Counted from the first letter of the stretch, positions 39,879 to 52,689 are shown. The stretch: DNA of 64,000 bases from Scyliorhinus canicula (GCF_902713615.1 NC_052154.1:68902096-68966095), one strand, 5' to 3'. Notes: generated by a model from the sequence alone, not told the origin. Numbers and translations: made by a program.

Positions 39879-40750
39879 TGTGGCGGCTTTGTCGGGCGAG
39901 GCGGCTCTTGTTCGGGACGGCAGCTGTGTGTGATTTGCAGACAATAGGTGTCACCGTCATTGCCGCACCGGGGCAGCAGCTCTGATCATTATATTAGGGC
40001 CACAAATAGGCGCTGAGGGATTGAATTGAAAGGCGGACTGGAAGCCTGTGTTTTTGCCTCTCTCGCAACCGCGGTGGTCGGACATTTTTTGTTTGGCAGG
40101 GTGAACTCCCACACCCCGCCCCGGCGGGGTCAGTGACATGGCGGCGGCAGCAGCAGCAGCTCGGAAACTGAGTCGGGAAGAGGTGGCGGAGCTGGTGGCT
40201 CTGGCCCTGCGCTCCGGCCTCAGCGAGCGGGACATCGCGGGGCTGGCGTCGGTGCAGAAGCTGCTGGGCCGCTGCCGCACCCGCCGCCGAGGCCTGGGGC
40301 CTACCGCCGCCGCCCTCGTCCTGCTGCTGCTCCTCCTGCTCTGTACCCCGCTCCCCCAGCCCGCCCTCCGCCTCTGGTTCTGGCTCCGCGGCCTGTCGGC
40401 CGACAGGCAGATGTGCGTGCTGGGCTTGCCCGACCTGCACAACACCTTCCGGCGGCCCCTGGACTGCCGGGTCTGCCACAACATCACCGGCGTGGACAGG
40501 AAGAGCAACCTGAGCCACGAGGAGTTCCTGCGGGCTTACGCCTACTCCATGCAGCCGGTGGTGGTGGAGGACGGCCAGAGGAACTGGTCGGCCCGGGAGG
40601 CCTTCAGCTTCGAGTTCTTCACGCGGATCTACGACAACGACAGCCGGGCCCTGGACAACAGCGGCAGCGAGTGCCAGTTCTTCCCCTACGACACCGAGTT
40701 TCTGAACCTGGGGGATGTTTTCAGTATGGAGGCTGGCCGTGTTGGCATGC
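39879..40750. promoter_or_regulatory. CpG island / promoter and first exon of the JmjC-like gene, head-to-head with tRNA-Leu
   Basis: Very high CpG density and a CCCCGCCCC GC box about 20 bp before the ATG. Confidence 0.6.
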
Positions 40751-40781
40751 ACAGCAATGCCAAACCTTGGTACATTGGATG
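40138..40781 (+). CDS. Uncharacterised type-II membrane JmjC/cupin-like protein, coding exon 1
   Basis: GC-rich ORF in a CpG island, start context gacATGG. Basic RCRTRRR precedes hydrophobic AAALVLLLLLLLC. Motifs FRRPLDCRVC, EEFLRAYAYSMQPVVV, CQFFPYDTEF, PWYIGW. Phase-2 donor TG|GTGTGT at 40782. Confidence 0.85.
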
Positions 40782-40938
40782 GTGTGTGTGAGACCATTCA
40801 GCAATTTCAATTTCCTTGTATGGTTCGGGGAGAATTACACACACAGGAGAGAGGATAGTGGAGTACCAGTCAGTAATCTGAGCTTTTTCCTCTTCCGCGA
40901 GGAAAAGAACAGGACCTTGGAGAGCCCTCCATTTAACA

Positions 40939-42550
40939 TTGAGATCCAAAAAGACGAGGTGTTGGGCGTCTTGAAAAATATTACGGTAGATAAGTCCCCA
41001 GGGCCTGACGGGATCTACCCCAGAATAATGAAGGAGGCTAGAGAGGAAATTGCTGAGGCTTTGACAGAAATCTTTGGATCCTCATTGTCTTCAGGTGATG
41101 TCCCGGAGGACTGGAGAATAGCCGATGTTCCTTTGTTTAAGAAGGGTAGCAAGGATAATCCAGGGAACTACAGGCCGGTGAGCCTTACGTTAAATTACTG
41201 GAGAGAATTCTTCGAGACAGGATGTACTCTCATTTGGAAGCAAATTTACGTATTAGCGAGAGGCAGCACGGTTTTGTGAAGGGGAGGTCGTGTCTCACTA
41301 ACTTGATATGGTTTTTCGAAGAGGTCACAAAGATGATTGATGCAGGTAAAGCAGTGGATGTTGTCCATATGGACTTCAGTAAGGCCTTTGACAAGGCCCC
41401 TAATGGCAGACTGGTACAAAAGGGGAAGTCACACAGAATCAGGGGTGAGCTGGCAAGATGGATACAGAACTGGCTAGGTCATAGAAAGCAGAGTAGCAGC
41501 AATGGAAGGGTGCTTTTCTGATTGGAGGGCTGTGACTAGTGGTGATCCGCAGGGATCAGTGCTGGACCTTTGCTGTTTGTAGCATATATAAATGATTTGG
41601 AGGAAAATGTAACTGGTCTGATTAGTAAGTTGCAGACGACATAAAAGTTGGTGGAATTACGGATAGCGATGAGGACTGCCGGAGGATACAGCAGGATTTA
41701 GATCGTTTGGAGACTTGGGCGGAGAGATGGCAGATGGAGTTTAATCCAAACAAATGTGAGGTAATGCATTTTGGAAGGTCTAATACGGGTAGGGAATATA
41801 CAGCGAAGGGTAGAATCCTCAAGAGTATTGACTGTCAGAGAGATCTAGGTGTACAGGTCCACAGGCCACTGAAAGGGGCAACACTGGTGGAGAAGGTAGT
41901 CAAGAAGGCATACGGCATGCTCGCCTTCATTGGCCGGGGCATGGAGTATAAGAATTGGCAAGTCATGTTGCAGCTGTATAGAACCTTAGTTAGGCCACAC
42001 TTGGAGTACAGTGTTCAATTCTAGTCGCCACACTACCAGAAGGATGTGGAGGCTTTAGAGAGGGTGCAGAAGAGATTTACCAAGATGTTGCCTAGTATGG
42101 AGGGCATTAGCTATGAGGAGCGGTTGAATAAACTCGGTTTGTTCTCACTGGAATGACGGAGGTTGAAGGGCGACCTGATAGAGGTCTACAAAATTATGAG
42201 GGGCATAGACAGAGTGGATAGTGAGAGGCTTTTTTCCCAGGGTAAAGGAGTCAATTACTAGGGGGCATAGGTTTAAAGGTGCGAGGGGCAAGGTTTAGAG
42301 GAGATGTACGAGGCAAGTTTTTTTGCACAGAGGGTAGTGGGTGCCTGGAACTCGCTGCCGGAGGAGGTGGTGGCAGCAGGGACGATAGTGACGTTTAAGG
42401 GGCATCTTGACCAATACATGAATAGGATGGGAATAGAGGGATGCGGACCCAGGAAGTGTCGAAGATTTTAGTTTGGACGGGCAGCATGATCGGCGCGGGC
42501 CTGGAGGGCCGAAGGGCCTGTTCCTGTGCTGTACTTTTCTTCGTTCTTTG
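40939..42550 (+). mobile_element. 5'-truncated CR1 LINE in intron 1 of the JmjC-like gene
   Basis: KSPGPDGIYPR, QHGFVKGRSCLTNL, DFSKAFDK, LVRPHLEYSVQF with frameshifts, and CR1 tail ggccgaagggcctgttcctgtgctgtac. Confidence 0.9.
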
Positions 42551-42769
42551 AAAAGGAAAAAGTGCCAAGGGCCACGATAAGTTTGGAAGGATATGAGCGA
42601 GTTCCCTTGATTTGCTGTTATCACACATGTGGACTTCAGCGGCTAAAGATTATAGGAACATGGAGAGATGTAAATGAACAGGACCTTGGAGAGCCCTCCA
42701 TTTAACAGAAAAGGGGGCATGTGACAATCATCAACTACCGTGTAAATTGGGGCGAATGTCATGTGAACA

Positions 42770-51169: not shown

Positions 51170-51640
51170 CCTGTTCTGGCCTTCCAGGTCCTCTGCAGGT
51201 GTGTGGCACTGGAATTTAAGCATACTTTGCCTTTAAAAGAAAATGGGTTCTGTTGTACGGTTATACAGCCTGATTTACATCAACTGAAGTCTGCCACCTC
51301 ACAAGGACCTTACCAATCCACCTGCTGCTCGCCTCCCATCACACCAGCCTATATGACTAAGACCACCGTGGGAAGGAATAACAGCAAAGACCTGGTGGCA
51401 ACAGGAATGGACCCAATGCACTACCTTAAAAACCACTTCCTCATCACAGATCCCGTAGCCCACCCAGCATTGGGCACTCCTCAGCCGTTTCCACATTGGA
51501 GCCTTTGTGCAGGAAATTGGCACAAGTGGGGTCTTTCAGGGAACCCGAACTGCAGCTGTGGTGCACCCCAATCAATGACTCTCATTGAAGACTGCCCCTG
51601 ATGAAATTCAGTAGCAGGCTCCGAGAGCTCCATTTAGGGT
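51170..51640 (+). mobile_element. Old LINE ORF2 C-terminal fragment (RTE-X/Ingi-like)
   Basis: HKWGLSGNPNCSCGAPQSMTLIEDCP resembles a degenerate CCHC finger at a LINE ORF2 end. Confidence 0.45.
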
Positions 51641-51890
51641 TCAGATTTTTCTTTCCCTTTTGCTCCATCACTAAAATGACTATAGAATAGGAATGCTGGA
51701 ATTGACATTTTAAATCATTTTAAGACATTCTAATTGTGTCCTTGTATGAAGCTCATTTAATTATATTGCTGGTTTTAAGATTTAAAACTGCCATACAGAA
51801 AGGTTAAGTGGAAATAGGAAAAAGGAGTCAAAGGGATAGGCAGGAAAGGAGAGTTTGAAGCGACAATCGTATCAGCCGTGAATTTATCAC

Positions 51891-52016
51891 AGAAGTCTTA
51901 CAACACCAGGTTAAAGTCCAACAGGTTTGTTTCGAATCACTAGCTTTCAGAGCACAGCTCCTTCCTCAGGTGGTTCACCTGTGCTCGCCCCAGTCCAGCG
52001 CCGGCATCTCCACATC
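51891..52016. mobile_element. Penelope-like fragment with internal inversion and hammerhead ribozyme core
   Basis: 51891-51972 is antisense (CACCTGAGGAAGGAGCTGTGCTCTGAAAGCTAG on the minus strand), ~51978-52016 is the sense 3' end. Degenerate ~12-bp TSD gtgaatttatca/atgaagttatca. Confidence 0.7.
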
Positions 52017-52559
52017 ATGAAGTTATCAAATGGCAGAGCAGGCTCGAGAAGTCGAATGTCCCACTCCTCCTAATTCGTATGCTCATATGAAAGAGCTTCA
52101 TCTTGAAGGTGAATATGAAGCTGTCTCTTTAATTCCCCAGTTCTATAATATTTGTTTAGGGAATGGGTTTTAGTGGGTTTTTACAGTACAGCTGTTGGTC
52201 TGAAGCAGTTATTACGCAAATGAAACCTGACTGTGGAGTTGGAGCCTAGACTGACACCACTGGAAGAGTGGGGGTGGTTTGCTTAGCTGTGTTTGAGTCA
52301 GTTTTGGCCTTCACACCCAAATTGCACTTTCTGAAGCCGTTTTAGGTTTCAATAATTCCAAACATGCAGATTATGAATACATCACACAAGTTTATTTTCC
52401 TTCACCTGCCTCACATTACAAATATAGGCCGAGTCCAAGCCTATCATCTTAAGCTATCTGACCTGTTACTACGTACAGATCATGACCGTTGAACTTTAAC
52501 CATATGCGTTCCTTACATTTGATGTTAAAATGATTTAGTAACTTTTTTTTTCCTTTTAG

Positions 52560-52689
52560 ATTGATGATGTTGATAATCCCTCATGGCAGGCCCAAATCAG
52601 AGGCATCAAACACTGGAAACTAGAACCTCCAGCAGAATGCTATTACGAATGTTCTTCTCTGGAAGCCATTGTGTACCCTGGGCAGATCA
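52560..52689 (+). CDS. JmjC/cupin-like protein, coding exon 3
   Basis: Strong polypyrimidine tract ttttAG|ATT GAT encodes IDDVDNPSWQAQIRGIKHWKLEPPAECYYECSSLEAIVYPGQI. 130 nt, donor A|GTAAGT. Splicing creates H-I-D. No further exon found in the window. Confidence 0.87.

What the first reader, a model, noticed from the sequence alone, without database searches (positions are those of the whole stretch)
40138..52689. Hidden spliced gene for a membrane-anchored, probably luminal JmjC/cupin-type oxygenase of unknown function
Seen: three phase-compatible exons (644+136+130 nt, about 303 codons) give ...PWYIGW|SNC...RPYF...DWIFMGVPGHGAHMH|IDDV..PSWQAQIRGIKHWKLEPP..C...C....VYPGQI. The ORF track shows only exon 1. 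Established: FMG.PG.G...HxD...W..Q..G.K.W is the JmjC/cupin-8 core, and HxD provides two of the three Fe(II) ligands of 2-oxoglutarate oxygenases. Seen: a basic cluster RCRTRRR before one hydrophobic helix, then four N-glycosylation sequons (NIT, NLS, NWS, NDS) and many cysteines. Inference: a type-II ER/Golgi-luminal or surface hydroxylase. It matches no named human JMJD gene I recognise and resembles uncharacterised invertebrate proteins, so it may be an ancestral enzyme kept in sharks and lost in other vertebrate lineages. This is my best candidate for undescribed biology here.
Basis: partly seen in the sequence, partly recalled or inferred. Interest (0 to 1): 0.75.

Follow-up and report, generated by a model that had tools for sequence, protein, structure and literature searches.

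The report
Shark membrane-anchored luminal JmjC hydroxylase gene
It belongs to an animal-wide enzyme family that nobody has studied and that, among vertebrates, turned up only in sharks, rays and chimaeras.

Summary
Exons 40138-40781, 45391-45526 and 52560-52689 (+) have canonical splice sites and give residues 1-303 of the RefSeq model 'uncharacterized protein LOC119971389' of Scyliorhinus canicula (331 aa). Spliced contigs from four studies carry junction 40781/45391. One 1,424-nt contig also runs on into exon 3. Exon 4, which holds the distal His, lies beyond the window.

The protein has a roughly 50-residue cytosolic helical head, one signal-anchor helix and a Cys-rich stalk. These are followed by a JmjC double-stranded beta-helix (pLDDT 87.8; Z 17.6 to JMJD5; 28% identity to JMJD6). 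H260, D262, H313, K277 and Y212 match the Fe and 2OG ligands of JMJD6. These residues and seven luminal cysteines are invariant in 52 sequences from Trichoplax to sharks.

The family occurs across animals and has no characterised member. Among vertebrates only chondrichthyans appeared, whereas the same tool found the neighbouring gene TMPPE in bony vertebrates. The protein is not JMJD6 (which is nuclear) and not JMJD8 (which has HxH).

The gene is not 'hidden', because it is already annotated. One lead remains open: by architecture the nearest named vertebrate family is C6orf89/BRAP. Catalytic activity, membrane topology and substrate are inferred, not shown. This scan holds no other note on this gene.

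The parts
39950..40137 (+). 5' UTR and promoter-proximal part of a CpG-rich island (GC 0.67-0.70 over 40000-40599)
   Evidence: Spliced contigs start at or before 40018-40071, and one runs over the stretch's start at 39950. GC profile. The ATG at 40138 sits in a good Kozak context, gtgacATGG.
40138..40781 (+). Exon 1 coding part (residues 1-214 plus 2 nt of W215). It encodes the cytosolic helical head, the signal-anchor helix, the Cys-rich stalk and the first half of the JmjC domain, including Y212.
   Evidence: 100% identical to P0001. The donor TG|gtgtgt is used in contigs of 4 runs.
40291..40353 (+). Codons of the single hydrophobic helix (about residues 52-72), preceded by the basic cluster RCRTRRR
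   Evidence: Kyte-Doolittle maximum of 2.24 at residues 52-70. Net charge is +6 on the N-flank and +2 on the C-flank. The model shows a helix at 54-69.
40782..45390 (+). Intron 1 (4,609 nt), holding highly repeated retroelement fragments at about 40905-42623
   Evidence: Joint 'skips 4609, GT..AG' in 4 runs, and contig depths in the thousands over 40905-42623. ORFs with reverse-transcriptase-like text appear.
45391..45526 (+). Exon 2 (last base of W215, then residues 216-260). Its last codon is the proximal Fe ligand H260.
   Evidence: contigs cover 45390-45526 exactly.
45527..52559 (+). Intron 2 (7,033 nt), containing a tRNA-Phe(AAA)-like element at 49639-49727 (-)
   Evidence: The loose end at 45526 in run X2 equals the start of exon 3. 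tRNA-like element.
52560..52689 (+). Exon 3 (residues 261-303 plus 1 nt). It holds D262 (52563-52565), Q270, K277 (52608-52610) and the C287xxxC291 pair.
   Evidence: Residue mapping to JMJD6 D189, N197 and K204 comes from the HMMER alignment.
52690..64000 (+). First 11.3 kb of intron 3. Exon 4 (residues 304-331, with distal His313) is not in the window.
   Evidence: tBLASTn of P0001 finds no match for residues 304-331 in the window. The donor is ATCA|gtaagt. A LINE-like 1,021-aa ORF lies on the minus strand at 59998-63063.

Best explanation
This is an expressed four-exon gene of the small-spotted catshark, of which three exons lie in the window. It encodes a 331-residue single-pass type II membrane protein. 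The first roughly 50 residues form a small three-helix head in the cytosol. Residues 52-72 act as a signal anchor. A stalk follows that carries C93 and an invariant C110xxC113 motif. Residues 117-331 form a compact JmjC double-stranded beta-helix that faces the lumen of the ER or Golgi, or the cell exterior. Fe(II) would be held by H260, D262 and H313. The C5 carboxylate of 2-oxoglutarate would be held by K277 with Y212 and Q270. With O2, the enzyme would hydroxylate a side chain (Lys, Arg, Asn, Asp or His, by analogy with JMJD6, JMJD5, JMJD7 and FIH) on a protein passing through the secretory pathway, releasing succinate and CO2. The gene belongs to an ancient, mostly single-copy, animal-wide family inherited vertically. 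Among vertebrates it has so far been found only in cartilaginous fishes. Shown here: the gene structure, the splicing, the predicted fold, the residue conservation and the taxonomic distribution. Inferred: the topology, the catalytic activity and the kind of substrate.
For: Gene and splicing. Fold: the AlphaFold2 model has pLDDT 87.8. Foldseek against PDB puts JMJD6 first (E 3e-13) and then JMJD5, TYW5, FIH and JMJD7. VIA-align gives Z 17.6 to JMJD5 (rmsd 3.0 over 190 residues), 17.0 to JMJD7 and 15.6 to JMJD6 at 28% identity. Sequence: phmmer against PDB hits JMJD6 at E 1.7e-9, and Cupin_8 is above threshold. Active site: the alignment places Y212, A257, H260, D262, Q270 and K277 on JMJD6 Y131, T184, H187, D189, N197 and K204. 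PMC6663879 describes these JMJD6 residues as the Fe triad and the 2OG C5-carboxylate binders. H260, D262, H313, K277, Y212 and Q270 are invariant in 52 sequences from Placozoa to sharks. Topology: the N-flank of the helix is net positive in nearly all members and the C-flank is near zero. Seven cysteines after the helix are invariant. There are 1-6 sequons after the helix and almost none before it, and N149-W-S/T is a sequon in 37 of 52 members. Selection: exons 2-4 are 90-100% identical among sharks and rays and 55-78% identical to Trichoplax, cnidarians and amphioxus. Vertical descent: chondrichthyans form a clade (99) that is sister to tunicates (91), and protostomes group together.
Against: No enzyme assay, localisation experiment or substrate exists for any member. 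T184 of JMJD6 is Ala here and N197 is Gln, so the 2OG pocket is not identical. The runs that show splicing are only guessed to be RNA. The exon-4 sequence comes from the RefSeq model, not from the window. Absence from bony vertebrates and cyclostomes rests on protein databases, not on genome searches.
Confidence: 0.78

Rival explanations
1. The protein is a non-catalytic pseudo-enzyme or scaffold of the early secretory pathway. It would act through protein binding, as is reported for C6orf89/BRAP and suspected for JMJD8, rather than through hydroxylation.
For: Once JmjC clusters are skipped, the nearest named Atlas clusters all carry C6orf89_N. BRAP is studied as a binding partner in ER-Golgi traffic, not as an enzyme (PMC13692995). 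T184 of JMJD6 is replaced by Ala.
Against: The complete His-Asp-His triad and the 2OG-binding Lys and Tyr are invariant over the whole animal tree. Such conservation is hard to explain without catalysis. Gene models that lack the motifs are mispredicted exons, not a degenerate clade.
Confidence: 0.08
2. The topology is the reverse of the one proposed, or the protein is not a membrane protein. The JmjC domain would then face the cytosol or nucleus like JMJD6, and the hydrophobic stretch would be a tail of a different kind.
For: All other well-studied JmjC-only hydroxylases except JMJD8 are cytosolic or nuclear. JMJD6 itself was once wrongly called a type II membrane receptor (PMC2453528). No dedicated topology predictor was available.
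Against: Every one of the 52 members has a hydrophobic stretch of at least 19 residues, with Kyte-Doolittle means of 1.4-3.1. The charge bias is positive-inside, seven cysteines after the helix are invariant, and the conserved sequons lie only after the helix.
Confidence: 0.06
3. The gene was not lost in bony vertebrates. Instead, C6orf89/BRAP would be its fast-evolving direct descendant there, making the shark gene the catalytically intact orthologue of C6orf89.
For: The two share an architecture: a cytosolic head that Pfam 38.1 calls C6orf89_N, one helix and a luminal domain. A chordate C6orf89 cluster scores 0.91 by language-model features. A C6orf89_N-bearing cluster matches residues 102-331 at TM 0.55.
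Against: No alignment with a C6orf89 sequence could be made here. AlphaFold-cluster hits suggest that flies have both a closer copy (29% identity) and a distant copy (19% identity) with the same architecture, which points to old paralogues. The shark gene lies next to TMPPE. From memory, the human counterpart of TMPPE is on 3p22 whereas C6orf89 is on 6p21.
Confidence: 0.2

Closest known systems
JMJD6 (PSR), nuclear lysyl 5-hydroxylase
   Same: It is the best sequence match among solved structures (E 1.7e-9; 21-29% identity). It has the same JmjC-only beta-helix. H187, D189, K204 and Y131 align with H260, D262, K277 and Y212.
   Different: JMJD6 is soluble and nuclear, has 403 residues with a long C-terminal extension, and has no signal anchor or conserved disulfide cysteines. 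Here T184 is Ala and N197 is Gln. Automatic names such as 'JMJD6-like' or 'psr-1-like' on family members are misleading.
JMJD5 / JMJD7 / FIH / TYW5 (JmjC-only hydroxylases)
   Same: These give the highest structural scores (Z 17.6, 17.0, 15.7 and 15.9). Like JMJD5, the chain ends right after the last beta-helix strand.
   Different: Identity is only 14-20%, they are cytosolic or nuclear, and they have no membrane anchor.
JMJD8, ER-luminal JmjC-only protein
   Same: It is the only known vertebrate JmjC protein in the ER lumen, possibly tethered by an uncleaved signal peptide (PMC5684140). The fold matches (E 3.8e-10).
   Different: JMJD8 has HxH instead of HxD at the iron site (PMC2938197; PMC5684140), whereas this family has invariant HxD. 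Identity is 19%. JMJD8 has no cytosolic head domain.
C6orf89 / BRAP (bombesin receptor-activated protein)
   Same: With JmjC families set aside, it is the nearest named family by language-model features (0.91). Clusters carrying Pfam C6orf89_N match the luminal domain structurally. It acts in the ER-Golgi system.
   Different: No paper in the searched library calls it a JmjC or cupin protein. The relationship was not tested by alignment here. Orthology is not shown.
ASPH and P4HTM (type II membrane 2OG oxygenases of the ER)
   Same: They follow the same logic, a signal-anchored 2OG/Fe(II) hydroxylase with a luminal catalytic domain acting on secretory proteins. This rests on established knowledge, not on a test here.
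   Different: Their catalytic domains belong to other 2OG oxygenase subfamilies, not JmjC.
'Secreted JMJD5-like family' of Iyer et al. 2010
   Same: It is an animal-only extracellular JmjC family with disulfide cysteines, reported as lost in vertebrates and predicted to hydroxylate cell-surface proteins (PMC2938197).
   Different: That family is defined by an N-terminal GHxxxhG motif, by three expanded subfamilies and by absence from arthropods. Here the motif is found in 0 of 52 members, the family appears mostly single-copy, and it is common in arthropods.

Membership tests
JmjC / Cupin_8 Fe(II)- and 2OG-dependent oxygenase superfamily | Double-stranded beta-helix fold | tested here: met
   The model has pLDDT 87.8. 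Z is 15-17.6 to JMJD5, JMJD7, TYW5, FIH and JMJD6 over residues 109-331.
JmjC / Cupin_8 Fe(II)- and 2OG-dependent oxygenase superfamily | HxD/E...H iron-binding triad | tested here: met
   H260, D262 and H313 are invariant in 52 of 52 sequences and align with JMJD6 H187 and D189.
JmjC / Cupin_8 Fe(II)- and 2OG-dependent oxygenase superfamily | Basic residue on strand IV binding the 2OG C5 carboxylate | tested here: met
   K277 aligns with JMJD6 K204 and Y212 with Y131, and both are invariant. N197 is replaced by Q270 and T184 by A257.
JmjC / Cupin_8 Fe(II)- and 2OG-dependent oxygenase superfamily | Pfam model above its gathering score | tested here: met
   Cupin_8 scores 30.6 bits against a cut-off of 27.4 for P0001, and 52 of 52 members match. 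Single exons alone give no hit.
JmjC / Cupin_8 Fe(II)- and 2OG-dependent oxygenase superfamily | 2OG-dependent oxidation of a substrate | not testable with these tools
   Needs a biochemical assay.
JMJD6 orthologues | Soluble nuclear protein of about 400 aa with a C-terminal extension and high identity among animal orthologues | tested here: not met
   Identity is 21-29%. The chain ends at the last beta-helix strand and an N-terminal signal anchor is present.
JMJD8 | HxH in place of HxD at the iron site | tested here: not met
   HxD is invariant. The JMJD8 feature is taken from PMC2938197 and PMC5684140.
JMJD8 | Close sequence relationship | tested here: not met
   Identity to mouse and rat JMJD8 is 19%, and they rank below JMJD6, JMJD5, TYW5, FIH and JMJD4.
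C6orf89 / BRAP family | Pfam PF28222 C6orf89_N head domain | tested here: inconclusive
   The local Pfam copy lacks this model. Atlas clusters near P0001 carry it in 12-100% of their members.
C6orf89 / BRAP family | Alignable luminal domain and 1:1 orthology | not tested
   No C6orf89 sequence could be obtained through the tools. C6orf89 is not among the 30 Swiss-Prot fold hits that were shown.
Secreted JMJD5-like family (Iyer et al. 2010) | N-terminal GHxxxhG motif and absence from arthropods | tested here: not met
   The motif is found in 0 of 52 members, and there are many arthropod members.

The most novel reading that the evidence does not exclude
Human C6orf89/BRAP, a poorly understood ER-Golgi membrane protein, would be a catalytically dead relative of this ancient luminal JmjC hydroxylase family. 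Cartilaginous fishes would be the only vertebrates that still make the active enzyme. The family's unknown hydroxylation of secretory proteins would then be a post-translational modification that bony vertebrates gave up, and studying the shark or invertebrate enzyme would reveal what BRAP once did.
Probability: 0.4. Interest if true: 0.7.

Novelty: new variant of a known kind. Interest (0 to 1): 0.58.

Why it matters
The JmjC-only hydroxylases characterised so far act in the cytosol or nucleus. Protein hydroxylation in the secretory pathway is known from other 2OG oxygenase subfamilies: prolyl and lysyl hydroxylases, ASPH and P4HTM. This family has an intact active site, a membrane anchor and a luminal domain, and it is conserved from Trichoplax to sharks. 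That implies an unrecognised hydroxylation of secreted or membrane proteins in most animals. It has probably escaped study because the searches here found no member in any bony vertebrate, which includes human, mouse and zebrafish. Its retention in chondrichthyans alone among vertebrates is a clear example of differential gene loss. The possible kinship with C6orf89/BRAP would give that human protein an evolutionary and structural context.

Tried and rejected
1. Pfam on single exons gave no hit. Only the whole protein passes Cupin_8.

2. Looking for exon 4 in the window found nothing.

3. Testing the C6orf89 link directly failed. The local Pfam copy lacks PF28222. C6orf89 is not among the 30 Swiss-Prot or 30 AlphaFold-cluster rows shown. 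No tool could supply a C6orf89 sequence. I did not type one from memory. My recollection of the human sequence suggests shared C-x(n)-CxxC and PPxxCxxxC...PGxI..DT..W motifs with the His ligands lost, but this is memory, not evidence.

4. The Atlas search with the N-terminal 100 residues alone was uninformative (score 0.80).

5. Literature searches for family accessions, for C6orf89 with cupin or JmjC, and for luminal JmjC enzymes returned nothing relevant.

6. The supplement of Iyer et al. is not held.

7. Identity with their 'secreted JMJD5-like family' was rejected on the missing motif and on the presence in arthropods.

8. Family members that lack HxD or WxH were inspected and are mispredicted gene models, not a degenerate subfamily.

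10. No complex prediction was run, because no binding claim is made.
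Full report
**Observation**

Each internal border is canonical: cacag|GAGTAA, ATGCAC|gtaaga, ttttag|ATTGAT and AGATCA|gtaagt. The phases fit, and the product is a 303-residue open frame.

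A protein search with exon 1 returned a 100% identical 331-residue RefSeq protein, 'uncharacterized protein LOC119971389 isoform X1 [Scyliorhinus canicula]' (P0001), on a 198.8-Mb contig. tBLASTn of P0001 on the window reproduces the three exons as residues 1-215, 216-260 and 261-303, and finds nothing for residues 304-331. The window is therefore catshark DNA, and the gene model already exists in public annotation. The fourth exon, whose product ends ...IVLDTNKWFHETHILGEDLSITIGSEYD, lies beyond position 64000.

**Expression**

Contigs of four public runs from four studies were laid on 39950-45650. Each run has one contig with the joint 40780->45390 (cut +1, GT..AG, skipping 4,609 nt). Contig 16 of run X2 (1,424 nt) covers 40150-40780 and 45390-45526, and then continues with ATTGATGATGTTGATAATCCCTCATGGCAG, which is the start of exon 3.

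The runs are only guessed to be RNA, and contigs cannot give expression levels. Two of the four runs lack 3 nt at 40147, a length polymorphism of the N-terminal alanine tract.

**What the protein is**

Single exons give no Pfam hit. The whole protein passes Cupin_8 (30.6 bits, cut-off 27.4), and all 52 aligned family members match it.

Among solved structures, phmmer finds only JMJD6 (E 1.7e-9, residues 112-284). An AlphaFold2 model built on a 52-sequence alignment has mean pLDDT 87.8. Foldseek ranks JMJD6, JMJD5, TYW5, FIH and JMJD7 first. VIA-align gives Z 17.6 to JMJD5 (rmsd 3.0 over 190 residues), 17.0 to JMJD7, 15.9 to TYW5, 15.7 to FIH and 15.6 to JMJD6, the last at 28% identity, over residues 109-331.

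The HMMER alignment places these residues on JMJD6:
- Y212 on Y131
- A257 on T184
- H260 on H187
- D262 on D189
- Q270 on N197
- K277 on K204

PMC6663879 describes these JMJD6 residues as two of the three iron ligands (the third is H273) and the four residues that hold the 2OG C5 carboxylate. The distal His is H313, in WFH313ET. H260, D262, H313, K277, Y212, Q270 and A257 are invariant in all 52 sequences. The active site is therefore complete and under strong constraint. Two pocket positions differ from JMJD6.

**Topology**

The model shows three short helices in residues 13-43, a long helix at 54-69, and then the stalk and catalytic domain. The hydropathy maximum is at residues 52-70.

Several features point to an N-terminus in the cytosol and a catalytic domain in the lumen:
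- The 15 residues before the helix carry a net charge of +6 and those after it +2. The same bias, a positive N-flank and a near-neutral C-flank, holds in almost all 52 members.
- Seven cysteines after the helix (C93, C110, C113, C179, C218, C287, C291) are invariant, whereas the cysteines before or within it are not.
- All four sequons of the shark protein lie after the helix. The one at N149 is a sequon in 37 of 52 members, N124 in 26 and N115 in 23.

This pattern is that of a type II signal-anchor protein with a disulfide-bonded, glycosylated luminal domain. It is an inference from sequence, and no experiment bears on it.

**Family and distribution**

An exhaustive HMMER search with exon 1 found 415 cluster representatives at E <= 0.001. 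Named members come from the following groups:
- Placozoa and cnidarians
- molluscs, annelids, nemerteans and priapulids
- rotifers and arthropods, including insects, crustaceans, chelicerates and springtails
- echinoderms, hemichordates, amphioxus and tunicates

Full-length identity to the shark protein is 42-52%. All are 'uncharacterized' or carry automatic names such as 'JMJD6-like', 'psr-1-like' or 'F-box protein At5g06550-like'.

Among vertebrates only sharks, rays and a chimaera appear, at 62-93% identity. After them the next hit is a bivalve at 50%.

The same tool served as a positive control. Given one exon of the neighbouring gene TMPPE, it returned orthologues from coelacanth, birds, mammals, reptiles, sturgeon, bichir and teleosts at 42-54% identity. 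An annotated bony-vertebrate orthologue of the JmjC gene would therefore have been seen.

A maximum-likelihood tree puts the six chondrichthyan sequences in one clade (support 99), sister to tunicates (91) and near amphioxus, with protostomes grouped together. That is the pattern of vertical descent. Exons 2-4 are 90-100% identical among sharks and rays, and 55-78% identical to Trichoplax, a sea anemone and amphioxus.

**Comparison with known proteins**

- JMJD6: the protein is not a JMJD6 orthologue. Identity is low, there is no C-terminal extension, and there is a membrane anchor.
- JMJD8: it is not JMJD8, which has HxH at the iron site (PMC2938197; PMC5684140) and only 19% identity.
- Iyer et al. 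2010 family: it is not their 'secreted JMJD5-like family', which has a GHxxxhG motif and is absent from arthropods. That motif occurs in none of the 52 members, and arthropod members abound.
- ASPH and P4HTM: in logic the protein resembles these signal-anchored luminal 2OG oxygenases, but they belong to other subfamilies (established knowledge).

**The C6orf89 lead**

In the ESM Atlas, once clusters with Cupin_8 or JmjC are skipped, the nearest named clusters all carry Pfam PF28222 'C6orf89_N'. They include a chordate cluster named 'Chromosome 6 open reading frame 89' (score 0.91, 161 of 256 features). By structure, an arthropod cluster in which 25% of members carry C6orf89_N matches residues 102-331 at TM 0.55. 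AlphaFold-cluster hits show fly and mosquito proteins that align over residues 14-331 at only 18-19% identity, beside a closer fly copy at 29%. This hints at two old paralogues with one architecture.

I could not obtain a C6orf89 sequence through the tools, and the local Pfam copy lacks PF28222. No alignment was therefore made, and the relationship stays a lead.

No paper in the searchable library links C6orf89 with JmjC, cupin or oxygenase terms. The shark gene lies 9.7 kb from the first coding exon of TMPPE (29616-30413, minus strand). The same pair of genes shares a contig in Heterodontus and Narcine.

**Verdict**

The gene is real and expressed. It very probably encodes an active Fe(II)/2OG hydroxylase that faces the secretory lumen, from an uncharacterised animal-wide family that cartilaginous fishes alone retain among vertebrates.

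It is not hidden from annotation, and the fold and chemistry are of a known kind. What is new is the combination of a JmjC hydroxylase with a type II anchor and a disulfide-rich luminal domain, the unknown substrate, the distribution, and the possible kinship with C6orf89/BRAP.

Noticed in passing
window 29616-30413 (-): This is the first coding exon of TMPPE (transmembrane protein with metallophosphoesterase domain), 100% identical to the S. canicula RefSeq protein. It lies head-to-head with the JmjC gene about 9.7 kb away. The same two genes share a contig in Heterodontus francisci and Narcine bancroftii.
   Followed up: partly
window 30923-31005 (+) and 39796-39878 (-): Two tRNA-Leu(CAG) genes lie in inverted orientation. 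The second lies 260 bp upstream of the JmjC gene's ATG, inside or next to its promoter region.
   Followed up: no
window 49639-49727 (-): A tRNA-Phe-like element with the unusual anticodon AAA lies in intron 2. It is probably a tRNA-derived repeat rather than a working gene.
   Followed up: no
window 40905-42623: Intron 1 holds retroelement fragments with reverse-transcriptase-like ORFs. Summed contig depth reaches thousands to more than 100,000 in all four runs, which indicates a very abundant, transcribed repeat family.
   Followed up: no
window 59177-63063 (-): Intron 3 holds a LINE-like element with an open 1,021-aa frame (endonuclease and reverse-transcriptase text) at 59998-63063 and a 280-aa ORF at 59177-60019. 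The region is GC-rich with a strong negative GC skew.
   Followed up: no
window 40147: There is a three-nucleotide length polymorphism in the GCN alanine tract at the start of the coding sequence. It is seen in contigs of 2 of 4 runs.
   Followed up: no
P0003, P0005, P0007, P0009 (other chondrichthyans): Predicted 'isoform X2' proteins stop just after exon 2 or exon 3 with unrelated tails. They look like read-through into the intron, and they lack the distal His, so they would be inactive if made.
   Followed up: partly
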